Below are positions 732-32,177 of a stretch of DNA of 64,000 nucleotides, piece after piece; position 1 is the stretch's first letter, and the number at the start of each line of letters is the position of its first letter. Under the pieces are notes generated by a model. That model saw only the letters and a program-made list of their open reading frames with translations. It did no database searches and was not told the origin of the DNA. Both the position numbers and the translations under genes were made by a program. The DNA lies in contig CM097887.1 of the NCBI GenBank assembly GCA_044892525.1, forward strand, positions 43,896,001-43,960,000, written 5' to 3'. The stretch is from Schmidtea polychroa. Taxonomy: Eukaryota.

Positions 732-3700
732 TGTTGGGGTTACACCTCGGCTGACCATTCTACCATGTTGGCGGGTCTAAGGGTTGATTGTCCATCTCGA
801 ATAAAAGGTGCCACCGATTTGTCAACCTGGAGTGAAACCCCACATAACTTTCTTCCAACATAGTGCCCGTGAATCACTTCACGTTGGTACTGCACTATGC
901 AGGCGAGACGCCAGCAAGCAGGTGAGCTTCTGCCTTAAAACTACTCCTTGCTGAGGCCTCGACTTCCCATTCACGACTGCCGATAGAAGGGCTTACGTCC
1001 ATTTCCTTACACAACCACCTATCAGGATTCGCTGAATGCAAATTGGGAAATTCTCACTAGATCTTGCGGGTTCTCTACTCAACCCACTTAATTCAAGTCT
1101 AATTATTCATGAACGAAAACGTGTAAGACAACAAGATTTATTAATTTCAACGTTATGACACAAGGATTCAGCTGTACTCTTTACTAATGTTTGTCGAAAG
1201 AAGAGAAAACATCATAATCAACATAGATCGGATCCTTGTTCCTCATCCTGACCGCCACTGGGGTTTTATTGTTTCTCCCATTCAGTGTCGGCGAATAATT
1301 CGTCGAGGTTGAAAAACTCGGAAGCGTTCTCTTCCCACCTTACGCCAGCGGCTGATATGATTCGCGCTGAGGGTCCCGTTGTTAGGTCGATGGACACGTG
1401 AGAGTTGCCACCGTTGGTTGAGTCCTCTATTGATGGGATGTTTGGCTTTGCAGTAGCGCGCTCGCGCTGTCTCTTCTTGCGCTCTGCACGAGAGAGTTGT
1501 TTGCGCTTGGGTTTGCTTGAAGATGCCACTTGCAGAAGGGTGACTGATACAGATGGACTAGCAGTGGGGGGCTTACTGGTACCCGTGATGACAACATCTG
1601 GACGCTTGGGGGACCATTCGGTTTCGACGCAGTCTCGGCACGGTCTCTTGAACGGTGGAGATGGATTCGAGGAAAGGTTGTGATGAGGCGGAAAGATGTC
1701 ATCGGCCTCTCGGATGGGAATCTGCACGATTTTTCGGGTTGTAGCCGCCTGCACGTAAACCTTATGCAGTGCCTCGGATTGTTCTCTGATTAGACTTCTT
1801 TGGGCACGGCTCTCAGATATAAGCGCGTCCCGGCAATGCTCGCTACGATCGAGCTTCTTTTGGATCTCTTTCATCCGAGCGGGACTAAACCATGTCCCTT
1901 CCAGCTCGTCTATCTTCCTCTTGTAACGTCCAATCTGAGTTTGTAGGTCCTTTATCACCGTATTTTTATCCGCGCACGAGAAGCACGGCCGTAATGCTGA
2001 TTTAGTGGTTGGTAGCATGCTTGCTATAAATAATACTAATGAAATGGAGAACATACGATTTTAGAATAAATTAGATACGACCCGCGTCCATTCGTGGATA
2101 CTTGACCGTCGAAAAGGAGGAAAACTTATTCTACAATCCGGTTTTACTACGGATCTTAGTTGTTAAAACAGTTTATTTAACCAAATGCCATCGGTTTGAC
2201 GCATGTTATTAACTTTGACTATCTATTGATCTAACTGTATGCATGAGGGACGTAATAATTGATAGGGTGTAAATATAATATTGGTGAAACAATATAATAA
2301 TGCTTTAGTAGAGGGACATTATAGTATGCGACCAAACCTTGCTATATGTTATCTATTTTAATTTATTAAAAACAAATTACTATCGCTCTCAACATATTTC
2401 TGATTCGAAATTTGTTATTGGAAGTGCACTTTTAATTCGGTAGTGAATGTGATTATCTATGTTGTCTACCATTGGTCTGAAAATATGTGATGAGTTTACA
2501 TCAGCCATTACTTTAACACCCTCATGGAAAATCCCATCGGTCATAACATATATCCAAATTTACGGATACTGCTGTCGACTGGTTGATTACATTATCGACC
2601 TATTGTGAATGTCACGTGTCGCGACTACTATGTATGCTAGTCTGATATTCTGTGCTCTCACCACATGGATTCGTGTATGGCTACTATCTTATCTCACTCA
2701 CTTGGTGTATGCCATTTTCACGGTGATTTTATCGATCCTGCTGTCGTATGATTTTCTCTGCACAGTGATTTATTTGAGTTATGATCTATGCTACCGCCAG
2801 TTCTCATCGCGGAGTTTTACCCTTATCAACTTGTGTGAATGATCACCATCGTTTGGAAATTTATTGGATCTTTTCAGTGATCGTCGAGGGAATAATTCTA
2901 CCAAATACTGGAGCATATTACTACTCTCGTCATTCTACTCGGATTTTCCTATTCAGATGTAATGCCGTCTCGATGAAACCTGTCCTTTTCTCTCAGGTTC
3001 AATAATTTGGATATATACAGTGATGACCTGGCTCTTATTGTAGAAATAAATGTTATTAATTAAATTTGGTGATATTTTACCTGTTTATAATTTTTGAAAT
3101 AACTAAGTCTATAAAACTTTCTGATTATAATATTAGAGAAGTTTTCGTAGAATCTCGCATTTTATAGTTTCGAGTTAGTTAAAGTTTTTAGAATACTTTC
3201 GTAACCTGACATACAATCTGGACAGGTTAGATGACATTGGGTCTATGATAATGGAATTTCATACGAATTTAGTTCTACTGAGTCCGGCAAATAGACGTTG
3301 TCGCAATTAATTTGATAAAACCATGTTTCCAGATGAAGCGTACTATGAGATGTTGTTATTTTTGACGAAGTTCACTAAATCGTGGTCTGGATCTCTTTTT
3401 TCAATAGGGGTAAGACTTACGAAAACGACTTGACGAAAGAAGAATGCGACGCCCTCAATCACTGTGCAAATCCTTGAAAATCCCTTCATTCGTATGACTA
3501 TCTTTGTGAAATCATTGTCTACCGGTTATTTTTTTTATCCATACCCCATTGTGATAATTTAGTCGCATCTTCAGCGATAGGACCCGTGAAGAAGCCTTCA
3601 CATTTCGGCCCAATCTAGCTGCGCGATTGAAATACTCCATGTCCACCGGCTGAGCTCCCGAAGGCACCTCATACCATGACATGGAGTATCTCAACTCCAC

Positions 3701-4574
3701 GTTACTCGTTAAATGAAAATTCATAAAATCTTTAATTCAAATAAAATACGGACATCTGGATAAAAATATTTTATTGATTCTGAAATACTTAAATAATACA
3801 AATTCCATCAATACGTTAAAGTTATTAAAATGGAGAATCAAATGAAGAGAGTTAACTAAAATGTTTAATCGTTAATATTTAACATTATTATTAGCTTTGC
3901 AAATACTTAAATAAATCTATAAACAAATGAAATACCCCTTACTATTGTTAGGCTGAGTCAAAATTCAATGTTGTTCGTTCCAAATAGTTCTAATGGTGGT
4001 CCGTTGGATGTCGATTATTGTGATGAATGGTATTTCGGTCTCTGAACTGGTTTTGAATAGTTGTGGAGTTTTCTGAATGACGGTTGCTTGGCTAGTAGTG
4101 TCGATCCTATGAAATGCTCGGGGTTAACAGTAAGCAGTAAACATTCTTTCTTACCTATGAAATGCTCGGGGTTAACAGTAAATTTAATGTTTTTGGTAGT
4201 TGTATATATATCAAATTCTTATTTGTGCGGACCAATCAGAGTTGAGTACCGCTTATTTCTATTAATTTAATATAATTTTCTTGTTTTTAGGTTGTTTTTT
4301 CCTTATTTTCTTTATTTTTAATATGTTTTTCTATTTATTTCCTTAATTTCCTTATTATTTCTTGAATTCCTCTTTATTTATTTGTCAACTTGTTCTATTT
4401 TAATCTTTTCTTAATTTTATTTTTTTGTTTTAATTCTTATGTCTTAATTATTATTTTCCTTATATCTTATTCTATTTTATTTCTGATTTTATTTATTTTA
4501 TTTTTATTTTTCTTAATGTTCTACTTCCCTACTTTCTTATTTTTCAACGATTAAATTTTCGACTCAGCCCAACA
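732..4574 (-). repeat. 3' LTR (3,843 bp)
   Basis: Matches 26672-30514 wherever compared; every ORF-track protein inside it is reproduced identically at +25,940; 7-bp terminal inverted repeat TGTTGGG/CCCAACA. Confidence 0.97.
1266..2054 (-). CDS. LTR-encoded 262-aa protein (hydrophobic N-terminus, two CxxC, coiled coil, Arg/Lys-rich motif, acidic-aromatic C-terminus); function unknown
   Basis: Intact ORF in the sense orientation of the element; MFSISLVLFIASML, CFSC, CRDC, KPKRKQLSRAERKKRQRER, EFFNLDELFADTEWEKQ. Confidence 0.75.
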   Translation of the reverse strand: MFSISLVLFIASMLPTTKSALRPCFSCADKNTVIKDLQTQIGRYKRKIDELEGTWFSPARMKEIQKKLDRSEHCRDALISESRAQRSLIREQSEALHKVYVQAATTRKIVQIPIREADDIFPPHHNLSSNPSPPFKRPCRDCVETEWSPKRPDVVITGTSKPPTASPSVSVTLLQVASSSKPKRKQLSRAERKKRQRERATAKPNIPSIEDSTNGGNSHVSIDLTTGPSARIISAAGVRWEENASEFFNLDELFADTEWEKQ

Positions 4575-4803
4575 AATCACTCGGGGACCCATCAAAATTG
4601 CGTCCCGCAATTGCATAATTAACTTAATTCATTCATTCAAAAAAAAAAAATATAACACGAACACGGAAAATTATACAACAATGATAAAAACTTTATTGTA
4701 AGATCAAGGTCAAAGCAAGACCAAGCAAGTATCACTTAAGGTGATAGTTGGTACATACAATAAAAGTTTCCACATATAATAACACAAATGTTTGAATTAG
4801 AGT

Positions 4804-5472
4804 TTATGAATTGTTAACCATTGATGCTTCTGCTGGCGGCTGTTGGTTGGTTTGGGTATTGATGTTGAGATAGGTCTGACTATTAGATTTCGGCTGGATT
4901 GGTTGATTACTCGGGGTTCGAGGTCGGAATGGGGTTGGGTTAAGATTTGTCAGGGGCACTTCTTGAGGATTTTGGTTCGAGGTTACTCTTATTGATGTCG
5001 AGATTCTACATCTATTTCGAACTTCGTAAATTTTCATGAATATTGGTAGACATAGGAGGAGGGTTTCTGCGATCACCACATATATGAGATAATGGGCGTT
5101 ATTGATTTCGGGAGGTATTTTTGGCTTTTCTACCAGATTTCCAAAATTCTCTTGTTGCATTTGTTGTTCCAACTGGTCGAATTGTTGAATTTGTTCGAGG
5201 ATTTGTTTGTTTATCATTTTACAAATGGGATTCTTTTTACACATTGTTTGGATGTTGTTGATGTGTGATCGGGTTGATTGAATGGTTTGGATGATATGGG
5301 TTTTTACGGTCATCGGGTATGTGCATTGACTGGATTCTTGTTTAGGTTCTTGATTTTGATTTCGGTAATCTCGTACGATTTTCGGTTGGGCGTCTATTTG
5401 TTTGCTCTCCATCAGAATCATCAATACCATCATTGTTATCATCATCTCGCCTCGCATGATACTATTATACAT
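4804..5472 (-). CDS. Accessory type I membrane protein (222 aa; likely start at Met 5457 or later)
   Basis: Met-rich signal MMITMMVLMILMESKQIDAQ, Cys-containing helical ectodomain, TM YLIYVVIAETLLLCLPIFM, Pro/Gln/Asn-rich tail. Confidence 0.75.
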   Translation of the reverse strand: MYNSIMRGEMMITMMVLMILMESKQIDAQPKIVRDYRNQNQEPKQESSQCTYPMTVKTHIIQTIQSTRSHINNIQTMCKKNPICKMINKQILEQIQQFDQLEQQMQQENFGNLVEKPKIPPEINNAHYLIYVVIAETLLLCLPIFMKIYEVRNRCRISTSIRVTSNQNPQEVPLTNLNPTPFRPRTPSNQPIQPKSNSQTYLNINTQTNQQPPAEASMVNNS

Positions 5473-5512
5473 TCATTATGTTTATTTACAATTGGTTTTA
5501 ATGACCCTTAAT

Positions 5513-6265
5513 TTAATGGTTCTGATTTGGATTATTTTCGCCGATTCTCATCAAGGTGGACTCTGCTTTAATTACCCTGTGTCTTAACTCGGGCAGCATT
5601 TCCAATTGTCGGTCTTTTTCACGGGCTTCTCTCTTTAGATGTCTAATTTCTTTTTCCAAGCGTCTAATTTCTTCCCTTTTCTTTTCAAGGTTTCTTTTTA
5701 GCTCGATTTGTAGGAGATCTTGTTCGTTTTCTTGCAGGTAATTTTGTTGTTGATGTTTTCTTTCTATTTCTCTATATTTGCGGACCCACTTCCTCATTTC
5801 TTTACTTTCCCGTTGGTTTTCTTCTAGTTGTCGTTTTAATTTATTTATAGCTGTTTGGCGCTCCTTCGCCTCAGTTTTCCAGTAGTCCTGGATTACCTCC
5901 TTTGCTTTGAAGCTTGCCCTCTCTTTCCATAGTTCTTCCGCTATCTTTTCCCAGTTTTTCCCTCGCTTCCTTTGTTCGTGTAGCCATTCATTTTCCTCTT
6001 CCGTTTCTCTTTTTATTTCCCCCAACGCTTCGCACTCTTTCTTTAACACCTTTATCATTTTCCGGTCCTCTAGGTATTTGTTTATTAATCTCCCGTTTTC
6101 GTATTTCTCTTCCCGTAACTCGGCCTTTAGCGTTTGTGTTTCTGTTGGTTCTGCCTCAATCTCTCCCTCTTCTACGTCGCTCATAATTTCTATCATTTCC
6201 TCGATTTTCATATCTATAATATGTACAGTTAATGGTGCGCTATAGTGCGACTTATACGTATACAT
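5513..6265 (-). CDS. Accessory coiled-coil protein (250 aa; likely start at Met 6211)
   Basis: Long Glu/Lys/Arg-rich heptad-like ORF, co-oriented with the element; no recognisable domain. Confidence 0.7.
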   Translation of the reverse strand: MYTYKSHYSAPLTVHIIDMKIEEMIEIMSDVEEGEIEAEPTETQTLKAELREEKYENGRLINKYLEDRKMIKVLKKECEALGEIKRETEEENEWLHEQRKRGKNWEKIAEELWKERASFKAKEVIQDYWKTEAKERQTAINKLKRQLEENQRESKEMRKWVRKYREIERKHQQQNYLQENEQDLLQIELKRNLEKKREEIRRLEKEIRHLKREAREKDRQLEMLPELRHRVIKAESTLMRIGENNPNQNH

Positions 6266-6382
6266 TGATATAAAATTTAATAGTTTGGGTTACAGTCCCT
6301 TGAATACTTTTACAATACTTTAATTTTTTTTTTGTTTGGGATATACGTCCCGGTTTTTAGTTTTTCATCTTTTCATCCACCC

Positions 6383-7492
6383 TTATACGAAGGTTTCCTC
6401 CTGGCCTACATAACCTTCATCACTATCGACCGCGGGATGTAACTGTATCGCAATAGGGTCGTATGGTAGGTAATATTGGGGGATTTGAGCTCTCAATTCA
6501 TTAATTTCGTCTCTTAGAGCTCGAGTGATGTTCAATTCCTCGTCGAGCAGATAGGTGAGATACCTTGTCTCTTCGTCTTTCGCCTCTATCTGTTTGTCTA
6601 GGGCCTTGATTTTCTCGTCGCCCTTCCATTTTTCAATTTCTATTTCTAAGTTTTTAATATTTTCGGTGTACATTTTCCTTTCGTTTTCTAATTTTCTGTT
6701 TTTTCCCGCTAGGACCATGTTTCTTTGTTCCAGCGATCCTTGTAATCCATTAAGGTCTCTTTTCATCTCTTCTACCTGATTTACTAATTCCACAACCCGT
6801 CCCGCTTGTTGGGTTATCATCTCTTCCATTGCGGCATTCTCGTGCTCTCTTATGTCGCACTTCATTGCCAAATGTCGCTCAAACTCCATAGCCTTTGTTT
6901 GCCAGGTTTGGCTTCGGGCGGCGACCTTTCTCAACCTTTTCAATTCTTCCTTTATTATTAAATTCTCCTCCCATTTACCTTGTTCGCTTTCATATCCGAG
7001 TCTCATGGGCAATTCTTTCATCTCTTTTTTCATTTCTCTGTTTTGTCTTTTCCATTTTCTCGCTTCTGCCACTAAGTGCATCATTTTCCTGTCTTCTATT
7101 TGTTTTTCCGCTTCGCGCTTGGTGTTCTCATCGGTAAGTCTTTTTCTCGCTTCCTGCACTAGCTGCTTTAAGTAGTGGCTGTGTGCTTCTTGGCGGGTAT
7201 TTTCTAGTGACGCCCATTTTGATGCTCTTTTGCATGCTTCTGCTTCCGCTCTTAAGTTGTGTATTAACCATTGGTATTGACTATTCTCATCTTCTCTAGT
7301 TTCTTCGATGTGATTTCGGGTGAGATTAGTTAGTTGGAACATTACTTTGTTCCATTTTTTATTATGTTCTCGGGGAATTTGTGTCTTGTTGACATTGGTT
7401 GGGGCTATCGCAGTTTCGGTTATTTTCTCTTGTGTCATCTCTAAATCATAGACATCGATTAATCTTTTTATTATGAAAAGGAATTTATTCAT
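6383..7492 (-). CDS. Accessory coiled-coil protein (369 aa; likely start at Met 7438)
   Basis: Long charged heptad-like ORF, co-oriented with the element. Confidence 0.72.
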   Translation of the reverse strand: MNKFLFIIKRLIDVYDLEMTQEKITETAIAPTNVNKTQIPREHNKKWNKVMFQLTNLTRNHIEETREDENSQYQWLIHNLRAEAEACKRASKWASLENTRQEAHSHYLKQLVQEARKRLTDENTKREAEKQIEDRKMMHLVAEARKWKRQNREMKKEMKELPMRLGYESEQGKWEENLIIKEELKRLRKVAARSQTWQTKAMEFERHLAMKCDIREHENAAMEEMITQQAGRVVELVNQVEEMKRDLNGLQGSLEQRNMVLAGKNRKLENERKMYTENIKNLEIEIEKWKGDEKIKALDKQIEAKDEETRYLTYLLDEELNITRALRDEINELRAQIPQYYLPYDPIAIQLHPAVDSDEGYVGQEETFV

Positions 7493-7630
7493 TATTTACT
7501 GTTTCTTGGGAAATTTTCGCATCATTTTTGGGTTTTCGTATTTAGGGTTTTCATACTATTATTATATAATATTTTATTGGTTATATACACCGATATATAC
7601 AGATTATTATATACAACATTATTCGATTGG

Positions 7631-9019
7631 TTACTCCGTTCTACCCTTCTCCTCTTTCCTCACGGTCATCTTGATATATATGGTATCATTTCTCGCCATA
7701 TCTTCTACTCTTTGTTGTGAGATGAACGTAGGTGCTCCTGTTGCTGATCCTTCTTCGTTGAGGGGCCTCTGGTAAGCTATTTGATTCCCCGTTGTTTTGA
7801 AGCTTTGCTCATGTATACTTTGGTTGTTCATCAGAGTAATATCGATTTTTGCCTGGAACGGCCATTCTAATATTTCGTCGTATTCTCCTTTACATAACAG
7901 AAAGAAAATCGAAAAGTGCGTATCCAATCCGGTTCCGTCCCCGTTGGGATATACCTTCATTTTCATTTTGTACCCATTTTTCCAAGAATGGAATGTAGGA
8001 CTTGTTATTCTTGTCTCTTCTCCGGTTTTTGCTTTTCGTATTCTTTCTTTTACTCCCGTTATTTTCCATATGTAGGGTGCTGTTGGGGTTATCTCATTTA
8101 GATTTATTTCCCGTATTTTCTGATGTAGCTCCTTGGCCTGATTATTACTGATTTCTGTTCGGTTTATTTGCATCTTTATGTTTGCTCGGGCTTCTTCGAA
8201 CGCTTCCCTTTCTTCTAGTAGTTCTTTGACTAACACTTTCAACGATGTTATCTCTATCTCCATTTGTTTTACTTTCTCTTCGCTTTCTTGTAGCGCAGTC
8301 GACCACATTTCTGCGTGAGTTGAAGCATTTCCTACTAAATGATGTGGTAACTCACCTCGGTGTAGTAGTTTCTGACAACCCCATCTACCTAGTACACATG
8401 TCATTCTTTTCTTTGCGCATTCCCTTAGATGCTGTGCCACCTTCATTATTTCCCCTTGGTTACATCCGTTTGGGCATTCCCCACTGAACTCTGCACATAC
8501 TCTCTCCTCTTGGACATTGTGATGTTTGAGGGTGAGATTTATCCACGTATCTATTTCTCCACAGTATTCACATCTTTCCAATCTCTCTTCACACTGCCTT
8601 TGATGCTCTTTTTCTTCGCTTGCTCGAATGGTTTTATGGCACCTTTCACACTGGCCAATTCTGTACATACATTCTCCCATATGTTGTACTACCTTCCATA
8701 TTACTCCTTTCCATTCGCATGGGGCATTTTTGCATCCCAGGTTGGTGTTTAACATGTCTTTCACTGCGGCTTTATCCTCGTTAGTGTCTTCTAAACTCGA
8801 TATTAGTGTCTCTTTACACACCGGGCACCTCTGTGGTCTATTCTTTATTGCTTCACTGATACATTCTTTACATACTCTGCATCCACATTGCGTTTGGTGA
8901 GGTTCCTTTAACAACTTTTCACATATTCCGCACATAACATGTTTGTGTATTCTGATCGTTGTAGATTTTCGGACTTGCTCGACAATCTCTCTGAACTCTT
9001 CTCTTTGTCGTTTATCCAT
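7631..9019 (-). CDS. TRAF-family protein (RING, TRAF zinc fingers, coiled coil, MATH/TRAF-C), intronless, inside the retroelement
   Basis: CGICEKLLKEPHQTQCGCRVCKEC...CPVC RING; C-x-N-x2-C-x-W-x-G...H-x3-C zinc fingers; YIWKI...SPTFHSWKNGYKMKMKVYPNGDG...HFSIFF...GEYDEILEWPF TRAF-C signature. Paralog cannot be assigned by eye. Confidence 0.93.
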   Translation of the reverse strand: MDKRQREEFREIVEQVRKSTTIRIHKHVMCGICEKLLKEPHQTQCGCRVCKECISEAIKNRPQRCPVCKETLISSLEDTNEDKAAVKDMLNTNLGCKNAPCEWKGVIWKVVQHMGECMYRIGQCERCHKTIRASEEKEHQRQCEERLERCEYCGEIDTWINLTLKHHNVQEERVCAEFSGECPNGCNQGEIMKVAQHLRECAKKRMTCVLGRWGCQKLLHRGELPHHLVGNASTHAEMWSTALQESEEKVKQMEIEITSLKVLVKELLEEREAFEEARANIKMQINRTEISNNQAKELHQKIREINLNEITPTAPYIWKITGVKERIRKAKTGEETRITSPTFHSWKNGYKMKMKVYPNGDGTGLDTHFSIFFLLCKGEYDEILEWPFQAKIDITLMNNQSIHEQSFKTTGNQIAYQRPLNEEGSATGAPTFISQQRVEDMARNDTIYIKMTVRKEEKGRTE

Positions 9020-9104
9020 TCTATAATTATATGTACAAATAGTTCTTATCGATACAGGTTCGATATTTTATTTACAATTATTTACATTTTAAGCTAGGTT
9101 TGGT

Positions 9105-9488
9105 TTAGGGTTCGGAAGAGTCGGCTTCGTGCCCGCTCTCCTCTCTATTCATTAGCCATTCCGACCAGTCTTCTATTTCTGTCTGTTCTGCTTCCTCCCT
9201 CATTCGGTCTATTTCAATTTCCTGTCGACGGCTATATTGGGTTATCCTCTCTATCTCTCTTTGCATTTGTTCGATTTTTAACCTCTGGTCTTCAATTATC
9301 TTCAAATAACTAAATCCTCTGTTCATACTCTCGATCAGGTTTCTGTGCATCGTCAGTCCTTGTTCTTGCAAATTGGACACTAATTGTGCTAATACGGCAC
9401 ATTGTTGCTTCCATAATTCTTCAGTTACTGTATTGTGGTTCATTTCGTTATTTCCTTGATCCATTCCTAATTTATATACACTTTTCAA
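9105..9488 (-). CDS. Accessory small coiled-coil protein (likely ATG start at 9464, MDQGN...)
   Basis: ORF track starts at a TTG; first ATG at 9464; helical, acidic C-terminus. Confidence 0.62.
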   Translation of the reverse strand: MKSVYKLGMDQGNNEMNHNTVTEELWKQQCAVLAQLVSNLQEQGLTMHRNLIESMNRGFSYLKIIEDQRLKIEQMQREIERITQYSRRQEIEIDRMREEAEQTEIEDWSEWLMNREESGHEADSSEP

Positions 9489-9624
9489 CTCTTATGTAAA
9501 TTTAATTTTATTTTATGATTCCCGTTATTGTATAATATTGATACCGCGCTTATATAAAGATATAGTACTGTTATATACATAAGATATACTTACTTTTTAC
9601 AATTATATACAGTCATATTCCTTT

Positions 9625-10635
9625 CTATATACGTGAGTTTGGAGGGCGCTGAACGTTCCAGGCCTCCACCCACTGTCCTTGTTTGATATCACTTGGTCGT
9701 TTCACTCGATGTTGGAAGTTTCTGATTCGGGTCATTTCTAGTTCTCCGCGATGTCGTTTATCTTTAATTATTTTTATTGTTCCCCCCGTTATGATTAGGA
9801 ATGCCCCTGTTATTATTATCCCACTGATCCACATCATCTGCTTCACGCTTATACTCTCTGGTTTTTCCTTGTTTGTTAATGTTGATATCGCTTCTGTACT
9901 TTTCTCGTTTCCTCTTTTGCCATTTCCTTTCATCATTTCCCGTATTCTTGCTATTTCCTCGTTCATACCCTCCTTTGCCATCTTTTGTATTTTTTCCATC
10001 TCTTCCTCCGAAACATAGTTGTCCTGAGCTTCCTCACCAGTTTTCTTGTGCTTTCCTCCTTCGTTCTTTTCGTCGTGGTTTTTTCTTTTCTTTCCTCTTT
10101 TCCCCGGGTATCGTCGGCATTCTCTTTTTGATTCATTCCTCCAGATACAAACCGTGTATTCTTTCGGCGGCTGCTGCTGCGTCACATATTGATGGCATCT
10201 CTCACCTGGTCCTAATCTTGAAATACAGACTTTGTGCTCTTTTCTAGGTTGGATCTGCGTTATTACTACTTCACCACCTTTTCCTAGGTGTACCTCTTTT
10301 CCTTTGACGTTCGTTATTCTCTTCCCGTCTCGATTTCGGTATGCTTCTTGTATTCTTACTTCTGTTATTGGTTCTGTGTCCTCATTTATCAGTACTAGTT
10401 TCTGATACGCTCTAGACATGCATCTTCCTAGTATGCACCTTTCCTTTAAGTCCCATTCTTCCTTTAAATCCCACTGCTGCTCTTGTGCTTGCTTTCTCTT
10501 TTCTTGTTTTAGTTCATCCTCTTTGCTATCTTGATTCTCCGCTTCTTTGGTTTCTTTTATCGTTCTCGTCCCTCCCTGAGCTGTTACTAACTCTATCATG
10601 GTAAGCATAATTATCATTAATATCATATTTGTCTC
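9625..10635 (-). other. C-terminal type I membrane protein module of the polyprotein
   Basis: Signal-like MILMIIMLTMIELVTAQ (about 10580-10635), Cys-containing ectodomain, TM MMWISGIIITGAFLIITGGTI (about 9775-9840), short basic tail. Confidence 0.65.
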
Positions 10636-22600: not shown

Positions 22601-23478
22601 CCACAGTTAAAACAGCCTCGCAATTGGCATACATTTTCGGTATGTCCACGCCGTCCGCAACGATTACAATTTGAATTTCTATAACAATCTCTGTCCCAGT
22701 GTCCTGGTTTACCGCATGTTCGGCACTGCTTGTTATCGTTCATATTTCGCCGATTATTGAAATTGTTCTCATTATTCGGGTTGTTACGATTACCATTATT
22801 CCCGTTTGATCGTCCTTGTGGTGGTTTGAAAATTTGGTGCGCTCCTGGTATAAATTGATTCATTTTCGGTTCTTGATTGTTGTTATCTCCGTTATCCGCT
22901 TTCGCTATTGCTGTCGCTATCCTTCCCTCCTCTTGCATAATATTCATTTGAGCTGGAAGGTGGAGCTCGCATCTTGTAGCCCAATCTATGGCTTCCTCTA
23001 ATGTTTTGCACATTTGACAACCTACTGAGGCTCTTACTTCTTCTCGGCGTAATCCCTCTATGAAATAACCGATCAGATTTTCTTCGGGTAATTTTCCATT
23101 CATTGCTTTCTTCGCTAATCTCCGCAATTCACTGGCATATAATGTTATCGATTCGTTTGCTCTTTGTTTCCTATTTGCTAGTTCGCCCAACGCCTGGTTG
23201 ATTGGCTTACTGGCTCCGAAGGTTTTCTTCAGGAATGTTTTAATATCTTCCCACTTTTCTAATTTCGTGTCTCTCTCTTTAGCTTCTAAATATACCTCTA
23301 ATGCACTATCGCACAAAAACAACGGCATCCTTTTACTAATTGCTTCGGGTGTCCATCCACACACAGTGATATAAACTTCAAAATTAGTTATGAACGATGC
23401 TAGCTTGTTTGCGTTTCCGTTGAACGGTTCTCCTCTGAACTTCTCTTTATACTCGTCGGTTTTTACGACATTCGTCAT
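9625..23478 (-). CDS. 4,617-aa Gag-accessory-Env-Pol-accessory polyprotein
   Basis: Single uninterrupted ORF containing CA-like region, CCHC knuckles, DTG protease, YIDD RT, TDAS RNase H and HHCC/DDE integrase, plus the extra domains listed separately. Confidence 0.97.
   Translation of the reverse strand: [4617 protein letters not shown]
11085..12625 (-). other. Two ankyrin-repeat modules downstream of integrase
   Basis: [30 protein letters not shown]; then [29 protein letters not shown]. Confidence 0.85.
12910..13945 (-). other. Integrase (HHCC, DDE core, GPY/F C-terminus)
   Basis: HDGRLGGH...CLTC; [38 protein letters not shown]. No chromodomain seen. Confidence 0.96.
14240..15480 (-). 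other. Reverse transcriptase and RNase H
   Basis: [96 protein letters not shown]. Confidence 0.97.
15960..16310 (-). other. Retropepsin aspartic protease
   Basis: [12 protein letters not shown] ... IIGTDLM. Confidence 0.95.
16780..18690 (-). other. Envelope-like class III fusion glycoprotein (chuvirus G / herpes gB-like) with internal signal peptide and TM anchor
   Basis: Signal [18 protein letters not shown] then FTIYDCD...YSLRDIEEC...YYCGQYSY...DGSCNGG...C-x6-C Cys pattern typical of chuvirus-type G; TM [25 protein letters not shown] at about 16880-16970. Confidence 0.8.
18796..19263 (-). other. Bcl-2-like domain (BH2-like motif clear, BH1 degenerate)
   Basis: All-helical segment ending [15 protein letters not shown] (BH2 consensus WIxxxGGWxxF); [22 protein letters not shown] sits at BH1 spacing but lacks NWGR. 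Confidence 0.55.
19820..21485 (-). other. Three ubiquitin-like domains (about 21270-21485, 20710-20963, 19820-20016)
   Basis: Beta-grasp pattern, e.g. [30 protein letters not shown]...[14 protein letters not shown] and [30 protein letters not shown]...[11 protein letters not shown], which parallel ubiquitin [30 protein letters not shown]...LIFAGKQLEDGRTLSDYNI. The first copy is the weakest. Confidence 0.65.
22570..23478 (-). other. Gag: capsid-like region plus three CCHC zinc knuckles
   Basis: [18 protein letters not shown] (major-homology-like); [42 protein letters not shown] at about 22570-22730. Confidence 0.9.
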
Positions 23479-24785: not shown

Positions 24786-25264
24786 TTACGACTGGCTGGC
24801 ACTATTCAACAGCTCAATCTTCTTCCTTCTGATCGGTTAGACTATTCAACAACTCGATCTTACGACTGGCTGGCATTATTCAACAGCTCAATCTTCCTCC
24901 TTCCTGATCGGTTGGACTTTTCACAACTCGACCTTACGACTGGCTGGCACTATTCAACAGCTCAATCTTCTTCCTTCTGATCGGTTGGACTATTCAACAA
25001 CTCGATCTTACGACTGGCTGGCACTATTCAACAGCTCAATCTTCCTCCTTCCTGATCGGTTGGACTTTTCACAACTCGACCTTACGACTGGCTGGCACTA
25101 TTCAACAGCTCAATCTTCTTCCTTCTGATCGGTTGGACTTTTCACAACTCGACCTTACGACTGGCTGGCACTATTCAACAGCTCAATCTTCTTCCTTCTG
25201 ATCGGTTGGACTATTCAACAACTCGATCTTACGACTGGCTGGCACTATTCAACAGCTCAATCTT
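24786..25264. repeat. Tandem array of about 6.5 copies of a 73-74 bp unit in the 5' leader
   Basis: ttacgactggctggc starts at 24786, 24860, 24934, 25008, 25082, 25155, 25229; no unique spacers. Confidence 0.95.
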
Positions 25265-25843
25265 CAATATTCCTCGCTCTGCATGCTTCTATTTCTCTTT
25301 TCTTCTTTTACTCTAGTTTACCATTTTCTCTGTCTACTTTTAATTTGTCGACTTAATCTTTACCGCTTGGGAGTGTTTCCCCTTTCCCCCCTTGCTCAAA
25401 ACGCACGACGATCGCGATGATCCATTTCTACCTTGGCATGGTGATCAGTCATGTCGCAAAAACTTCTCATCATATGCGATGGTACCCCGCCCTACGCTTC
25501 TTACTTGGGTTGATCAGTTATCCCCTCCCAACGGGTTCTTGCAATAAGACGTACCGCCCGAAGGTGGCTCGGTTTGTACCCCTGCAGTCTATATTGGGAC
25601 TAATTCCACGTTATTCAACCCTCTCTTCATTTGATTCCAAAAAAAAAAAGGAATAAAACAAAACAAACACGCAAATATTCATTCGTCATGCAAATTTTAT
25701 TAGTCCTAATCATCAAAACTTTTTAAAGACGAATTTATTTATCATAAACATAAAGATTGAATCATTAACAGTACGTGTTACTTCAACAATTTCATGCATT
25801 CTTGTTCAAACATCGTATACTTGCTGTTACATCGCCGGCCGTT

Positions 25844-26329
25844 TCATTCGCCATAATAGACCATATGGGTCTCTTTTATTTCATATTTGCACATCGTGCA
25901 TCTTTTTAGGTCTTTTACACACTCTTCACAGTGACTGAGGTGTCCACACGGCAAGAATAATACGCGAATAGGACGGAGTTTGCAGGCTATACAAGTTCGT
26001 AATTGGTTAACTTTTTCCTGTATTTTTTGTTCGATTGCATCTGGTATTGTATTTAGTGAGTCTTTTAGACGCTGATAATCTAGATTTAATGTTGGGTGGT
26101 TCAATCTCTCTTGATACCACTGATATACGGTTTCGGGGTTTATTTTTCCATCTGGGCGACTTAGGCCTGTGGCTAATATCATATGATTAGGTACGACTGG
26201 TGTTTGTCCGATTGCTTGCAGTAATATCGCGTTGATTTTTTCTCTTTTATGCGTCAGTGTTGTTAGGGAGTCGTTTTCTATATCGATAAACTTGAGCAGT
26301 TGTTGCATTTGGTTCGCGAATTCTGTCAT
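25844..26329 (-). CDS. 161-aa protein with C-terminal IAP/XIAP-type C3HC4 RING, no BIR domain
   Basis: CIACKLRPIRVLFLPCGHLSHCEECVKDLKRCTMCKYEI at the extreme C-terminus, preceded by helix QKIQEKVNQLRT. Confidence 0.85.
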   Translation of the reverse strand: MTEFANQMQQLLKFIDIENDSLTTLTHKREKINAILLQAIGQTPVVPNHMILATGLSRPDGKINPETVYQWYQERLNHPTLNLDYQRLKDSLNTIPDAIEQKIQEKVNQLRTCIACKLRPIRVLFLPCGHLSHCEECVKDLKRCTMCKYEIKETHMVYYGE

Positions 26330-26646
26330 AGCTGTTGGAAAAGTAATGTTTTAATAATATGTAGTAAATTAATAGTTAATTCGTTAATTGGTTTCTTTAA
26401 CCATTGTTAATTATTTAATTTGACTACTTTATCTCCTTTATTTATATATATCCTTAATTTTTCTATTATCTACATTTTGATTTTCTCTACTTAGTTCCTA
26501 ATATAATTTAATAATCAATAGTCACTTTGCATTCGTCAAGCAATGGTCGGTTGAAAATAGAAAATCGATGTGATAAATCCCTTTAATTTTGTATGAAAAT
26601 CCCGGTGAATTTCGCATTCGTTAATAGAAATTTCGATCGACTGTAG

Positions 26647-26664
26647 ATCCCGGCTGAGCCCCCA
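26647..26664 (-). promoter_or_regulatory. Primer-binding site, tRNA-Pro type
   Basis: Minus strand TGGGGGCTCAGCCGGGAT, 7 nt after the 5' LTR; 16/18 identical to the MLV tRNA-Pro PBS TGGGGGCTCGTCCGGGAT and complementary to a ...CCCGGCTGAGCCC-CCA tRNA 3' end. Confidence 0.88.
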
Positions 26665-26671
26665 AAAATCA

Positions 26672-29600
26672 TGTTGGGGTTACACCTCGGCTGACCATTC
26701 TACCATGTTGGCGGGTCTAAGGGTTGATTGTCCATCTCGAATAAAAGGTGCCACCGATTTGTCAACCTGGAGTGAAACCCCACATAACTTTCTTCCAACA
26801 TAGTGCCCGTGAATCACTTCACGTTGGTACTGCACTATGCAGGCGAGACGCCAGCAAGCAGGTGAGCTTCTGCCTTAAAACTACTCCTTGCTGAGGCCTC
26901 GACTTCCCATTCACGACTGCCGATAGAAGGGCTTACGTCCATTTCCTTACACAACCACCTATCAGGATTCGCTGAATGCAAATTGGGAAATTCTCACTAG
27001 ATCTTGCGGGTTCTCTACTCAACCCACTTAATTCAAGTCTAATTATTCATGAACGAAAACGTGTAAGACAACAAGATTTATTAATTTCAACGTTATGACA
27101 CAAGGATTCAGCTGTACTCTTTACTAATGTTTGTCGAAAGAAGAGAAAACATCATAATCAACATAGATCGGATCCTTGTTCCTCATCCTGACCGCCACTG
27201 GGGTTTTATTGTTTCTCCCATTCAGTGTCGGCGAATAATTCGTCGAGGTTGAAAAACTCGGAAGCGTTCTCTTCCCACCTTACGCCAGCGGCTGATATGA
27301 TTCGCGCTGAGGGTCCCGTTGTTAGGTCGATGGACACGTGAGAGTTGCCACCGTTGGTTGAGTCCTCTATTGATGGGATGTTTGGCTTTGCAGTAGCGCG
27401 CTCGCGCTGTCTCTTCTTGCGCTCTGCACGAGAGAGTTGTTTGCGCTTGGGTTTGCTTGAAGATGCCACTTGCAGAAGGGTGACTGATACAGATGGACTA
27501 GCAGTGGGGGGCTTACTGGTACCCGTGATGACAACATCTGGACGCTTGGGGGACCATTCGGTTTCGACGCAGTCTCGGCACGGTCTCTTGAACGGTGGAG
27601 ATGGATTCGAGGAAAGGTTGTGATGAGGCGGAAAGATGTCATCGGCCTCTCGGATGGGAATCTGCACGATTTTTCGGGTTGTAGCCGCCTGCACGTAAAC
27701 CTTATGCAGTGCCTCGGATTGTTCTCTGATTAGACTTCTTTGGGCACGGCTCTCAGATATAAGCGCGTCCCGGCAATGCTCGCTACGATCGAGCTTCTTT
27801 TGGATCTCTTTCATCCGAGCGGGACTAAACCATGTCCCTTCCAGCTCGTCTATCTTCCTCTTGTAACGTCCAATCTGAGTTTGTAGGTCCTTTATCACCG
27901 TATTTTTATCCGCGCACGAGAAGCACGGCCGTAATGCTGATTTAGTGGTTGGTAGCATGCTTGCTATAAATAATACTAATGAAATGGAGAACATACGATT
28001 TTAGAATAAATTAGATACGACCCGCGTCCATTCGTGGATACTTGACCGTCGAAAAGGAGGAAAACTTATTCTACAATCCGGTTTTACTACGGATCTTAGT
28101 TGTTAAAACAGTTTATTTAACCAAATGCCATCGGTTTGACGCATGTTATTAACTTTGACTATCTATTGATCTAACTGTATGCATGAGGGACGTAATAATT
28201 GATAGGGTGTAAATATAATATTGGTGAAACAATATAATAATGCTTTAGTAGAGGGACATTATAGTATGCGACCAAACCTTGCTATATGTTATCTATTTTA
28301 ATTTATTAAAAACAAATTACTATCGCTCTCAACATATTTCTGATTCGAAATTTGTTATTGGAAGTGCACTTTTAATTCGGTAGTGAATGTGATTATCTAT
28401 GTTGTCTACCATTGGTCTGAAAATATGTGATGAGTTTACATCAGCCATTACTTTAACACCCTCATGGAAAATCCCATCGGTCATAACATATATCCAAATT
28501 TACGGATACTGCTGTCGACTGGTTGATTACATTATCGACCTATTGTGAATGTCACGTGTCGCGACTACTATGTATGCTAGTCTGATATTCTGTGCTCTCA
28601 CCACATGGATTCGTGTATGGCTACTATCTTATCTCACTCACTTGGTGTATGCCATTTTCACGGTGATTTTATCGATCCTGCTGTCGTATGATTTTCTCTG
28701 CACAGTGATTTATTTGAGTTATGATCTATGCTACCGCCAGTTCTCATCGCGGAGTTTTACCCTTATCAACTTGTGTGAATGATCACCATCGTTTGGAAAT
28801 TTATTGGATCTTTTCAGTGATCGTCGAGGGAATAATTCTACCAAATACTGGAGCATATTACTACTCTCGTCATTCTACTCGGATTTTCCTATTCAGATGT
28901 AATGCCGTCTCGATGAAACCTGTCCTTTTCTCTCAGGTTCAATAATTTGGATATATACAGTGATGACCTGGCTCTTATTGTAGAAATAAATGTTATTAAT
29001 TAAATTTGGTGATATTTTACCTGTTTATAATTTTTGAAATAACTAAGTCTATAAAACTTTCTGATTATAATATTAGAGAAGTTTTCGTAGAATCTCGCAT
29101 TTTATAGTTTCGAGTTAGTTAAAGTTTTTAGAATACTTTCGTAACCTGACATACAATCTGGACAGGTTAGATGACATTGGGTCTATGATAATGGAATTTC
29201 ATACGAATTTAGTTCTACTGAGTCCGGCAAATAGACGTTGTCGCAATTAATTTGATAAAACCATGTTTCCAGATGAAGCGTACTATGAGATGTTGTTATT
29301 TTTGACGAAGTTCACTAAATCGTGGTCTGGATCTCTTTTTTCAATAGGGGTAAGACTTACGAAAACGACTTGACGAAAGAAGAATGCGACGCCCTCAATC
29401 ACTGTGCAAATCCTTGAAAATCCCTTCATTCGTATGACTATCTTTGTGAAATCATTGTCTACCGGTTATTTTTTTTATCCATACCCCATTGTGATAATTT
29501 AGTCGCATCTTCAGCGATAGGACCCGTGAAGAAGCCTTCACATTTCGGCCCAATCTAGCTGCGCGATTGAAATACTCCATGTCCACCGGCTGAGCTCCCG

Positions 29601-30514
29601 AAGGCACCTCATACCATGACATGGAGTATCTCAACTCCACGTTACTCGTTAAATGAAAATTCATAAAATCTTTAATTCAAATAAAATACGGACATCTGGA
29701 TAAAAATATTTTATTGATTCTGAAATACTTAAATAATACAAATTCCATCAATACGTTAAAGTTATTAAAATGGAGAATCAAATGAAGAGAGTTAACTAAA
29801 ATGTTTAATCGTTAATATTTAACATTATTATTAGCTTTGCAAATACTTAAATAAATCTATAAACAAATGAAATACCCCTTACTATTGTTAGGCTGAGTCA
29901 AAATTCAATGTTGTTCGTTCCAAATAGTTCTAATGGTGGTCCGTTGGATGTCGATTATTGTGATGAATGGTATTTCGGTCTCTGAACTGGTTTTGAATAG
30001 TTGTGGAGTTTTCTGAATGACGGTTGCTTGGCTAGTAGTGTCGATCCTATGAAATGCTCGGGGTTAACAGTAAGCAGTAAACATTCTTTCTTACCTATGA
30101 AATGCTCGGGGTTAACAGTAAATTTAATGTTTTTGGTAGTTGTATATATATCAAATTCTTATTTGTGCGGACCAATCAGAGTTGAGTACCGCTTATTTCT
30201 ATTAATTTAATATAATTTTCTTGTTTTTAGGTTGTTTTTTCCTTATTTTCTTTATTTTTAATATGTTTTTCTATTTATTTCCTTAATTTCCTTATTATTT
30301 CTTGAATTCCTCTTTATTTATTTGTCAACTTGTTCTATTTTAATCTTTTCTTAATTTTATTTTTTTGTTTTAATTCTTATGTCTTAATTATTATTTTCCT
30401 TATATCTTATTCTATTTTATTTCTGATTTTATTTATTTTATTTTTATTTTTCTTAATGTTCTACTTCCCTACTTTCTTATTTTTCAACGATTAAATTTTC
30501 GACTCAGCCCAACA
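26672..30514 (-). repeat. 5' LTR (3,843 bp)
   Basis: Second copy of the LTR; followed on the minus strand by the PBS, so it is the 5' LTR. Confidence 0.97.
27206..27994 (-). CDS. Second copy of the LTR-encoded 262-aa protein
   Basis: Translation identical to 1266-2054. Confidence 0.75.
   Translation of the reverse strand: MFSISLVLFIASMLPTTKSALRPCFSCADKNTVIKDLQTQIGRYKRKIDELEGTWFSPARMKEIQKKLDRSEHCRDALISESRAQRSLIREQSEALHKVYVQAATTRKIVQIPIREADDIFPPHHNLSSNPSPPFKRPCRDCVETEWSPKRPDVVITGTSKPPTASPSVSVTLLQVASSSKPKRKQLSRAERKKRQRERATAKPNIPSIEDSTNGGNSHVSIDLTTGPSARIISAAGVRWEENASEFFNLDELFADTEWEKQ

Positions 30515-32111: not shown

Positions 32112-32177
<66 letters not shown>

What the first reader, a model, noticed from the sequence alone, without database searches (positions are those of the whole stretch)
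732..30514. Intact 29.8-kb Gypsy element built like an enveloped complex retrovirus
Seen: identical-looking 3.8-kb LTRs, TSD, PBS, a 13.9-kb uninterrupted polyprotein ORF, 6 internal accessory ORFs and an LTR ORF, all co-oriented with no visible disabling mutation. Established: typical Gypsy elements are about 5-10 kb; giant ones are known from plants (Ogre/Tat) and from the planarian Schmidtea mediterranea (Burro). I cannot check whether this element belongs to a described family. Inference: an envelope glycoprotein plus many host-interaction genes points to an infectious or cell-to-cell mobile endogenous retrovirus-like lineage.
Basis: partly seen in the sequence, partly recalled or inferred. 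Interest (0 to 1): 0.95.

Follow-up and report, generated by a model that had tools for sequence, protein, structure and literature searches.

The report
Intact giant Burro-type planarian retroelement
This is a very recent, fully open-reading 29.8-kb copy of a Burro-type giant Gypsy retrovirus-like element, whose envelope gene fused between gag and pol and whose TRAF, RING and ankyrin cargo were already described for planarians, so it is striking but not new.

Summary
Two 3,843-bp LTRs are 100% identical and end in TG..CA. A 4-bp target-site duplication (AAGG) sits inside a host satellite that continues on both sides. One 4,617-aa ORF and six further co-oriented internal ORFs share the same codon usage, and each LTR carries a 262-aa ORF. 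No gene is broken, and all PR, RT, RNase H and IN catalytic residues are present.

The polyprotein order is Gag (three CCHC knuckles), 1.3 kb-aa unannotated cargo, Env, PR, RT, RNase H, IN, ankyrin repeats, unannotated tail. Env is a class III fusion glycoprotein: Pfam PF24664 E 5e-70, modelled fold matching herpesvirus gB, and nearest chu-like virus glycoproteins. It keeps its own Met, signal peptide and membrane anchor. The accessory ORFs include a complete TRAF homologue and an IAP-type RING protein.

This architecture was published for Burro/GYPSM1 of Schmidtea mediterranea and a Burro-like element reconstructed from Dugesia tigrina (PMC6431247). The GAG-ENV-POL order with gB-type Env is also reported for Platyhelminthes (PMC13524379). 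The novelty claim therefore fails.

This copy differs from the published Burro1 description: TRAF is a separate downstream gene, and no BIR, BCL2 or dUTPase domain was detected. Species and subfamily could not be established. Infectivity remains an inference.

The parts
728..731 (.). Target-site duplication, left copy (AAGG)
   Evidence: flanks belong to one host 91-bp tandem repeat
732..4574 (-). 3' LTR (in element sense), 3,843 bp, TG..CA
   Evidence: 100% identical to 26672-30514
1266..2054 (-). LTR ORF, 262 aa (copy in 3' LTR). Signal-like N-terminus and a basic cluster; 51% GC; no homologues
4804..5472 (-). Accessory ORF o222 (222 aa). Signal-like N-terminus, about 100-aa Cys-containing segment, TM at aa 128-146, Pro/Gln/Asn-rich tail; looks like a small type I membrane protein
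   Evidence: no Pfam or PDB hit
5513..6265 (-). Accessory ORF o250 (250 aa), Glu/Lys/Arg/Leu-rich, probably coiled coil; function unknown
   Evidence: (weak Fib_alpha)
6383..7492 (-). Accessory ORF o369 (369 aa), Glu/Lys/Leu/Arg-rich; function unknown
7631..9019 (-). Accessory ORF TRAF462: complete TRAF homologue (RING and TRAF zinc fingers aa 22-155, coiled coil, TRAF-C/MATH aa 248-454)
   Evidence: Pfam MATH E 2e-27 and RING; PDB TRAF2/3/1/5/6 down to E 9e-28
9105..9488 (-). Accessory ORF o127 (127 codons from TTG; first Met at codon 9), helical and acidic
9625..23478 (-). Single polyprotein ORF, 4,617 aa, uninterrupted
22549..23478 (-). Gag (aa 1-310): Retrotrans_gag aa 52-145 and three CCHC knuckles at aa 252, 271, 289
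18718..22548 (-). N-terminal cargo region (aa 311-1587), Glu/Lys-rich and almost Cys-free. No family hit, and not conserved in the metagenome relatives
16699..18717 (-). Env module (aa 1588-2260): own Met, signal peptide (h-region aa 1601-1615), class III ectodomain, TM anchor aa 2178-2196, conserved tail
   Evidence: PF24664 E 5e-70; 1,063 homologues; AF2 pLDDT 85.8; gB fold E 6e-14; chu-like virus glycoproteins E 1e-41
16015..16290 (-). Aspartic protease (aa 2397-2488; DTG at 2411-2413)
14875..15351 (-). Reverse transcriptase (aa 2710-2868; YIDD at 2817-2820)
14251..14688 (-). RNase H (aa 2931-3076; D2966, E3008, D3033, D3076 invariant)
12889..13977 (-). Integrase (aa 3168-3530): HHCC, D3251-D3311-E3347, C-terminal SH3-like part
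11053..12699 (-). Two blocks of ankyrin repeats fused to the C-terminus of IN (aa 3594-4142)
9628..11052 (-). C-terminal cargo (aa 4143-4617), unannotated, with two hydrophobic segments (aa 4285-4299, 4549-4563)
   Evidence: (model failed)
24786..25265 (.). 74-bp tandem repeat x6.5 in the 2.4-kb leader between the upstream ORF and gag
25844..26329 (-). Upstream accessory ORF RING161: C-terminal IAP-type RING (aa 99-156); no BIR domain
   Evidence: Pfam zf-C3HC4_3 E 3e-11; PDB cIAP1/2 and XIAP RING E 2e-10
26646..26664 (-). Candidate primer-binding site (TGG-initiated 19-mer, 7 nt downstream of the 5' LTR)
   Evidence: tRNA partner not testable
26672..30514 (-). 5' LTR (in element sense)
27206..27994 (-). 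LTR ORF, copy in 5' LTR
30515..30518 (.). Target-site duplication, right copy (AAGG)

Best explanation
The locus is a very young, coding-intact insertion of a Burro-type giant Ty3/Gypsy (Metaviridae) endogenous retrovirus-like element, most probably in a dugesiid planarian genome.

Shown:
- LTR-TSD anatomy and a single Gag-cargo-Env-PR-RT-RH-IN-ankyrin ORF with every catalytic residue present.
- A chuvirus-type class III (gB-fold) fusion glycoprotein with its own Met, signal peptide and TM anchor.
- A cassette of co-oriented accessory genes, including a full TRAF and an IAP-type RING.

Inferred mechanism:
- A full-length LTR-to-LTR transcript is translated into one polyprotein.
- The internal signal peptide drives the Env ectodomain into the ER lumen and the TM anchor stops transfer. 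Gag and Pol then stay cytosolic on either side of a membrane-embedded Env, a flavivirus-like polyprotein topology.
- Signal peptidase and the element's own protease would release the parts.
- Alternatively or additionally, Env is made from a subgenomic mRNA that starts at its retained Met.
- Gag particles carrying RT and IN reverse-transcribe and integrate with a 4-bp duplication.
- Env would allow budding and entry into neighbouring cells.
- TRAF, RING and ankyrin cargo would modulate TNF/NF-kB-type signalling, ubiquitination and apoptosis of the expressing cell.
- The downstream accessory genes may be expressed from their own units, because the AT-rich spacers carry TATA-like clusters and polyA-like hexamers.
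For: Anatomy.

Domain order and catalytic residues.

Env:
- PF24664 E 5e-70.
- 1,063 homologues, with 14 ectodomain Cys columns at least 90% conserved in a 64-sequence alignment.
- AF2 model pLDDT 85.8.
- Foldseek to herpesvirus gB E 6e-14 and to chu-like virus glycoproteins E 1e-41, TM 0.54-0.65.
- Signal, TM anchor and conserved tail.

Accessory genes: shared codon usage; TRAF; IAP-type RING.

Spacer motifs.

Literature:
- The same architecture is described for Burro/GYPSM1: giant ORF1, three CCHC knuckles in S. mediterranea, env in frame between gag and pol with mononegavirus glycoprotein hits, MATH_TRAF, ankyrin, internal tandem repeats, accessory ORFs (PMC6431247).
- GAG-ENV-POL with gB-type ENV is reported for Platyhelminthes (PMC13524379).
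- BURRO1 is transcribed, piRNA-controlled and called highly active (PMC8532177; PMC6884822).

Host composition: flanks are 24-29% GC, which fits the more than 70% A/T reported for S. mediterranea.

Relatives: metagenome contigs share Gag-x-Env-PR-RT-RH-IN in one ORF.
Against: Species and subfamily are not proven.
- None of the seven tested ORF products (the polyprotein, five internal accessory ORFs and the LTR ORF; o127 was not looked up) is in the 15-billion-protein collection.
- No Burro reference sequence was available.

This copy departs from the published Burro1 description.
- It is 4,617 aa rather than 4,873 aa.
- MATH/TRAF is a separate downstream gene rather than in frame.
- BIR, BCL2-like and SUMO-like domains were not detected at Pfam E<=1.
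- No dUTPase-like domain appeared in the same Pfam scan or in a PDB profile search of the PR-RT linker.

Other weak points:
- The PBS is only a candidate and no polypurine tract is obvious.
- The Env ectodomain has a single N-glycosylation sequon.
- A second hydrophobic stretch after the TM anchor (aa 2216-2230) leaves the Pol-side topology uncertain.
- No expression, processing or particle data exist for this locus.
Confidence: 0.82

Rival explanations
1. The 'perfect' element is an assembly product. Thousands of near-identical copies could be collapsed or polished into one averaged copy with artificially identical LTRs, placed at a locus where the true copy is different or absent.
For: There are 0 mismatches in 2 x 3,843 bp. 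An N stretch begins 258 bp beyond the right end (30772-30953). Burro copies are reported in thousands and as an assembly problem (PMC6431247; PMC11410931).
Against: Both junctions are clean. The AAGG duplication is present. The right flank continues the same host 91-bp repeat unit exactly where the left flank stops. No frame disruptions of the kind chimeric collapse usually produces were seen.
Confidence: 0.08
2. The element is a strictly intracellular retrotransposon. The Env segment and cargo are retained for reasons other than transmission, such as membrane targeting of assembly or host manipulation, so no extracellular or cell-to-cell phase exists.
For: Env is locked in frame inside Gag-Pol instead of being a separately regulated gene. 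The ectodomain has only one N-glycosylation sequon. Published work treats BURRO1 as a retrotransposon under piRNA control, with no report of particles.
Against: The full class III ectodomain, the family's conserved cysteines, the signal peptide, the TM anchor and a strongly conserved tail are all retained here and in relatives only 32-40% identical. This indicates long-term purifying selection on a complete fusion protein.
Confidence: 0.3
3. The element represents a giant Gypsy lineage unrelated to Burro. It would have converged on the same layout in another host, and so would be new.
For: No close protein relative was found in the searched collections: the best is 46% in Pol and 41% in Env over the full length. 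Domain content differs from the Burro1 description.
Against: The shared peculiarities are many and specific. They are three CCHC knuckles, mononegavirus-type env in frame between gag and PR, ankyrin after IN, TRAF-MATH and RING cargo, an internal tandem repeat, about 30 kb total size, and a host more than 70% A/T (against PMC6431247). The searched databases evidently lack planarian genomes, which explains the missing close hits.
Confidence: 0.08

Closest known systems
Burro-1 to -4 / GYPSM1 of Schmidtea mediterranea and the Burro-like element of Dugesia tigrina (Jurka 2007; Grohme et al. 2018; Arkhipova & Yushenova 2019, PMC6431247)
   Same: Total size about 30 kb with multi-kb LTRs. One giant ORF starting with Gag and three CCHC knuckles. 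Env in frame between gag and PR, related to mononegavirus fusion glycoproteins. PR-RT-RH-IN followed by ankyrin repeats. TRAF-MATH and RING-type cargo, accessory ORFs, and an internal tandem repeat.
   Different: The polyprotein is 4,617 aa, against 4,873 aa (Burro1) and 5,140 aa (D. tigrina). TRAF is a complete separate gene downstream of pol; it is in frame in Burro1 and upstream in D. tigrina. No BIR, BCL2-like, SUMO-like or dUTPase-like domain was detectable here. Direct sequence comparison was not possible.
GAG-ENV-POL 'errantivirus-like' Ty3/Gypsy elements with HSV gB-type ENV in Platyhelminthes, Nematoda and Bryozoa (Chary & Hayashi, PMC13524379)
   Same: Gene order gag-env-pol and a class III (gB-fold) Env, confirmed here by modelling.
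   Different: Those are described as ordinary-sized elements with separate ORFs. Here everything is one ORF, with about 2.4 k-aa of extra cargo plus a six-gene accessory set.
Metagenome-derived single-ORF Gag-x-Env-PR-RT-RH-IN polyproteins (P0058, P0061, P0065, P0066, P0069, P0071, P0075, P0079 and others)
   Same: Same core order. Pol is 42-46% identical and Env 32-40%. Some carry ankyrin after or before Pol.
   Different: The elements are about 16 kb between LTR-like repeats (L002, L003). They have no homologues of the N-terminal cargo, the C-terminal cargo or any accessory ORF. Their hosts are unknown.
Glycoproteins of Jingchuvirales and other Monjiviricetes (Pfam PF24664) and their insect genomic copies
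   Same: Env is a member of this family by sequence and fold.
   Different: Those are stand-alone proteins of about 650-690 aa from negative-strand RNA viruses. Here the module is embedded in a retroelement polyprotein, at 17-28% identity.
Drosophila errantiviruses (gypsy, ZAM) and complex or foamy-like retroviruses with accessory ORFs
   Same: LTR retroelements with an envelope gene. The complex and foamy-like retroviruses also carry accessory genes downstream of pol.
   Different: Drosophila env is class I/F-type, sits 3' of pol and is made from a spliced mRNA. Retroviridae RT/IN and Env are not the nearest relatives of this element, and their sizes are 7-17 kb.

Membership tests
Ty3/Gypsy LTR retroelements (Metaviridae) | LTRs ending TG..CA, flanked by a 4-6-bp target-site duplication | tested here: met
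   3,843-bp identical LTRs and an AAGG TSD
Ty3/Gypsy LTR retroelements (Metaviridae) | Pol order PR-RT-RNase H-IN with Gypsy-type domains (RT_RNaseH, Integrase_H2C2) and Gag with CCHC | tested here: met
   Pfam; catalytic residues; best database hits are Ty3/Gypsy-type polyproteins. No formal phylogeny was run.
Ty3/Gypsy LTR retroelements (Metaviridae) | tRNA primer-binding site and polypurine tract next to the LTRs | tested here: inconclusive
   A TGG-initiated 19-mer lies 7 nt after the 5' LTR. No host tRNA set was available (no tRNA in the window). No clear purine run precedes the 3' LTR.
Burro / GYPSM1 giant elements of dugesiid planarians | Size about 30 kb or more, with a giant single ORF starting with Gag and three CCHC knuckles | tested here: met
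   29,783 bp; 4,617-aa ORF; knuckles at aa 252, 271 and 289, compared with PMC6431247
Burro / GYPSM1 giant elements of dugesiid planarians | env in frame between gag and PR, related to mononegavirus fusion glycoproteins | tested here: met
Burro / GYPSM1 giant elements of dugesiid planarians | Cargo: MATH_TRAF, ankyrin, RING (AIR1-like), either in frame or as accessory ORFs | tested here: met
   Ankyrin is in frame. TRAF and RING are separate ORFs. The literature notes that such domains alternate between in-frame and accessory positions.
Burro / GYPSM1 giant elements of dugesiid planarians | BIR, BCL2-like, SUMO-like and dUTPase-like motifs reported for Burro1-4 | tested here: not met
   None found at Pfam E<=1 in seven polyprotein pieces. 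The PR-RT linker profile gives no dUTPase in PDB. Divergent helical BCL2-like folds could escape these tests; the single-sequence model of the C-terminus failed.
Burro / GYPSM1 giant elements of dugesiid planarians | Host is a dugesiid planarian, with nucleotide similarity to a Burro reference | not testable with these tools
   No planarian genome or Repbase entry is reachable. Exact-protein and homologue searches were empty. Only composition (24-29% GC flanks) agrees.
Class III viral fusion glycoproteins (gB / G / GP64 fold), Pfam PF24664 branch | Sequence membership, multi-domain class III fold, N-terminal signal and C-terminal TM anchor | tested here: met
   E 5e-70; pLDDT 85.8; gB E 6e-14 with probability 1.0; chu-like virus glycoproteins E 1e-41; signal and TM
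Retroviridae (complex retroviruses) | Retroviral-type Pol and a class I TM/SU Env encoded 3' of pol | tested here: not met
   Nearest Pol relatives are Ty3/Gypsy. Env is class III and lies 5' of PR. Only the presence of accessory genes is analogous.

The most novel reading that the evidence does not exclude
This copy may belong to an undescribed Burro subfamily with a modular, complex-retrovirus-like expression plan. That plan would include:
- a downstream cassette of five genes (o127, a full TRAF, two coiled-coil proteins, a small type I membrane protein), possibly served by its own TATA-like and polyA-like signals;
- an IAP-type RING gene in the leader;
- a GC-rich LTR-borne ORF with a signal peptide and a basic cluster;
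- an Env module that keeps its own start codon and signal peptide inside the polyprotein.

With identical LTRs and no broken gene, it could be a currently active enveloped member of Metaviridae in an animal whose pluripotent stem cells make somatic insertions heritable.
Probability: 0.3. Interest if true: 0.6.

Novelty: already known. Interest (0 to 1): 0.33.

Why it matters
Burro-type elements are the largest LTR retroelements known. They are the only ones with an envelope gene fused in frame between gag and pol, and they carry apoptosis and NF-kB-type cargo.

A copy with identical LTRs and every reading frame open is a clean reference for describing three things:
- how such a polyprotein could be laid out across a membrane;
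- which cargo is fixed and which is mobile between subfamilies;
- how recent the activity of the family is.

It does not change what is known about the class. Its value is as a well-annotated specimen. It also shows that the first-stage novelty score was too high.

Tried and rejected
Identifying the source or close relatives:
- Exact look-up of seven ORF products among 15 billion proteins found none.
- Homologue searches gave one distant hit for TRAF462 and none for the LTR ORF.
- A metagenome scan with the Pol segment found no close relative.
- The species therefore stayed unproven.

Literature access:
- Grohme et al. 2018 is not held.
- The primer table of PMC8532177 and the supplements of PMC13524379 are not held. 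No Burro reference letters could be compared.

Unannotated regions:
- Rfam and tRNA scans of the window were empty.
- Pfam at E<=1 on seven polyprotein pieces found nothing in aa 300-1620 or aa 4100-4617.
- PDB sequence searches of Env, the C-terminus, o369, o222 and LTR262 gave nothing usable.
- The single-sequence AlphaFold model of aa 4140-4617 reached only pLDDT 45 and was not searched.
- The dUTPase-like domain reported for Burro1 was not supported.

Other negative checks:
- There is no paralogy among the element's own proteins.
- There is no second copy or solo LTR in the rest of the window.
- The bacterial-type promoter/terminator scan of the LTR was uninformative.

Rejected ideas:
- A host-gene identification of the species from the WD40 exons, because the search tool's length filter would exclude full-length orthologues.
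- A self-priming reading of the PBS, because it rests on only 7-8 complementary bases to the LTR start.

The alignment tools printed consensus lines on their own.

Full report
**1. Observation**

A direct-repeat search and a base-by-base comparison show two copies of a 3,843-bp sequence, at 732-4574 and 26672-30514. They have no mismatch and begin TG and end CA. Both are flanked by AAGG (728-731 and 30515-30518).

The left flank is a host tandem repeat of 91 bp (556-731). The right flank, aligned separately against that array, continues the same unit at the point where the left flank stops. The element is therefore a genuine insertion with a 4-bp duplication, and the chance of an assembly join is low.

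An N stretch at 30772-30953 lies 258 bp beyond the element and was left untouched.

All long ORFs are on the minus strand:
- one of 13,854 nt (9625-23478, 4,617 aa, no stop);
- one upstream of it (25844-26329);
- five downstream (9105-9488, 7631-9019, 6383-7492, 5513-6265, 4804-5472);
- a 262-aa ORF in each LTR.

A codon log-likelihood test was trained on the polyprotein frame against its off-frames. It gives +0.20 to +0.30 per codon for frame 0 of all six internal accessory ORFs and negative values for their other frames. They are therefore coding and share the element's usage.

The LTR ORF is different: 51% GC and +0.05 per codon. It is still longer than any ORF in 300 block shuffles of the LTR, where the maximum was 172 aa.

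**2. The polyprotein**

Pfam places the following domains:

| Domain | Position (aa) |
|---|---|
| Retrotrans_gag | 52-145 |
| zf-CCHC | best stretch 287-303; three CX2CX4HX4C motifs at 252, 271, 289 by pattern search |
| Monjiviricetes fusion glycoprotein, PF24664, E 5e-70 | best stretch 1868-2207; module about 1590-2234 by BLASTP to relatives |
| RVP | 2397-2488 |
| RVT_1 | 2710-2868 |
| RNase H | 2931-3060 |
| Integrase zinc domain and core | 3168-3357 |
| Ankyrin repeats | about 3594-4142 |

An alignment with four relatives shows the catalytic residues present and invariant:
- PR: DTG.
- RT: D2757 and YIDD.
- RNase H: D-E-D-D.
- IN: HHCC and D3251-D3311-E3347.

No gene of the element is broken.

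About 1,280 aa between Gag and Env are Glu/Lys-rich and almost free of cysteine. This region and the last 475 aa match no family at E<=1.

**3. Env**

A full HMMER scan of 1.84 billion representatives found 1,063 homologues.
- The nearest (33-41% identity over the full length) are embedded in other retroelement polyproteins.
- Hundreds of stand-alone proteins of about 650-690 aa follow at 22-28% identity.
- One of the stand-alone proteins checked (P0140) clusters with a protein named 'Glycoprotein' in a beetle genome.

In a 64-sequence alignment, 14 cysteine columns are conserved in at least 90% of rows, and this element keeps them.

The AlphaFold model built on that alignment has mean pLDDT 85.8. 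Foldseek matches it over about 650 columns to herpesvirus gB structures (E 6e-14, probability 1.0). Among predicted viral structures the best matches are glycoproteins of chu-like viruses of arthropods and crustaceans (E 1e-41, TM 0.54-0.65). Env is thus a chuvirus-type class III fusion protein.

The module starts with its own Met (aa 1588). This is followed by a basic n-region, a hydrophobic core (aa 1601-1615) and a small-residue cleavage-like motif. It ends with the strongest hydrophobic segment of the polyprotein (aa 2178-2196) and a tail. That tail is highly conserved in a closer fragmentary relative.

**4. Accessory genes**

- **TRAF462** matches TRAF6/5 RING and zinc fingers over aa 22-155. 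It matches the coiled coil and TRAF-C domain of TRAF3/2/1 over aa 248-454 (E down to 9e-28). It is a complete TRAF.
- **RING161** ends in a RING closest to those of cIAP1/2 and XIAP, and has no BIR domain.
- **o222** has a signal-like N-terminus, a short Cys-containing segment, a TM helix and a Pro/Gln/Asn-rich tail.
- **o369, o250 and o127** are charged and helical in composition and have no relatives.
- **The LTR ORF** has a signal-like start and a basic cluster, and no homologue.

The spacers between the downstream genes total 769 nt at 26% GC. Each holds at least one AWTAAA. TATA-like motifs cluster in two of them, and five of the six window matches to TGTATATAA lie there. Part of this enrichment is compositional.

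**5. Relatives**

Database polyproteins with PF24664 come from metagenome assemblies. They share Gag, Env and PR-IN in one ORF (Pol 42-46%, Env 32-40%). They lack the cargo regions and all accessory ORFs. Two of their contigs show LTR-like repeats about 16 kb apart.

**6. Comparison with the literature**

Arkhipova & Yushenova 2019 (PMC6431247) describe Burro/GYPSM1 of S. mediterranea. The features listed are:
- more than 30 kb in total and thousands of copies;
- a 4,873-aa ORF1 beginning with Gag and three CCHC knuckles;
- MATH_TRAF, BIR, BCL2-like and SUMO-like motifs, a dUTPase-like motif between PR and RT, and ankyrin repeats;
- internal tandem repeats and accessory ORFs;
- an env homologue in frame between gag and pol, with hits to arthropod and fish mononegavirus glycoproteins.

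They state that cargo domains may alternate between in-frame and accessory positions, as for TRAF in Dugesia tigrina. They also propose that these elements are integrated proviruses.

Chary & Hayashi (PMC13524379) report GAG-ENV-POL elements with gB-type ENV in Platyhelminthes. BURRO1 is transcribed, tissue-enriched, piRNA-controlled and called highly abundant and active (PMC8532177; PMC6884822).

The present element shares all the diagnostic peculiarities, and its flanks (24-29% GC) fit a planarian genome. The differences are:
- length of 4,617 aa;
- TRAF as a separate downstream gene;
- an IAP-type RING upstream;
- no detectable BIR, BCL2-like, SUMO-like or dUTPase-like motif.

I could not fetch any Burro sequence or planarian genome, so subfamily and species remain open.

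**7. Mechanism**

Shown: the anatomy and the intact coding capacity.

Inferred:
- LTR-driven genomic RNA is translated into one polyprotein.
- Env is inserted co-translationally through its internal signal and stopped by its anchor. Gag and Pol remain cytosolic, and signal peptidase and the element's protease release the parts.
- A subgenomic Env message from the retained Met is an alternative.
- The TRAF, RING and ankyrin proteins plausibly interfere with TNF/NF-kB-type signalling, ubiquitination and cell death.

The uncertain points are the second hydrophobic stretch in the Env tail (aa 2216-2230), the scarcity of glycosylation sequons, the unidentified PBS partner and the missing polypurine tract.

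With zero differences in 7,686 compared LTR positions the insertion is very young. An age in years cannot be given without a planarian substitution rate.

**8. Verdict**

The structural interpretation is right, and the infectivity inference is untested.

The residual new points are the gene-by-gene annotation of this variant, the retained Env start and signal, the spacer motifs, the small membrane protein and the LTR ORF. I found none of these described in the papers I could read.

Noticed in passing
window 36629-38194 (+): Fragment of a different Ty3/Gypsy element holding RT and RNase H only. It is 35% identical to the giant element's RT-RH. No other domains were found in the listed ORFs, and it has no nucleotide similarity to the giant element.
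   Followed up: partly
window 60695-61138 (+): Short ORF with a partial reverse-transcriptase domain (RVT_1, E 5e-11). It is another retroelement remnant.
   Followed up: no
window 40034-40477 and 44036-44443 (+): Two ORFs with WD40 repeats, probably exons of a host WD40 gene. It was not identified further because the homologue tool's length filter would exclude full-length proteins.
   Followed up: partly
window 556-731, 30519-30771 and about 31230-31330: Host 91-bp tandem repeat (GACTCATCAAGG-type units) on both sides of the element and again beyond the N stretch. The element sits inside a satellite-like array.
   Followed up: yes
window 4575-9624 (minus-strand spacers between accessory ORFs): AT-rich spacers (26% GC) each contain AWTAAA. 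TGTATATAA and ATTGTAAAWA recur there (five of six and three of six window hits). They could be internal promoter or polyA signals, or simply composition.
   Followed up: partly
window 23568-23823 (-): Just upstream of the gag ATG the polyprotein frame is open for 115 more codons without a Met. A second frame holds an 83-codon stop-free stretch with coding-like codon usage (+0.26). The meaning is unknown.
   Followed up: no
polyprotein aa 1601-1615, aa 4285-4299; o222 aa 1-22: Three similar Met/Ile/Leu/Thr-rich signal-like segments. The one at aa 4285, together with a hydrophobic stretch at aa 4549-4563, suggests a second membrane-protein-like module at the polyprotein C-terminus.
   Followed up: partly
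L003 1-6000 and L004 17000-24600 (contigs of ENA assembly ERZ25039515): The metagenome contigs carrying related elements also carry bacterial-type genes (ABC transporter, MacB, TetR, luciferase-like monooxygenase, MnhB) next to the retroelement. This looks like chimeric assembly or mis-called genes.
   Followed up: no
L002 16872-18689: A DNA_pol_B_2 ORF (protein-primed polymerase type) lies downstream of a related element. It possibly belongs to an adjacent Polinton/Maverick-like element.
   Followed up: no
window 62699-62786 and 32110-32190: Long pure (TAT)n / (TTA)n microsatellites. The N stretch at 62228-62396 was left as it is.
   Followed up: no
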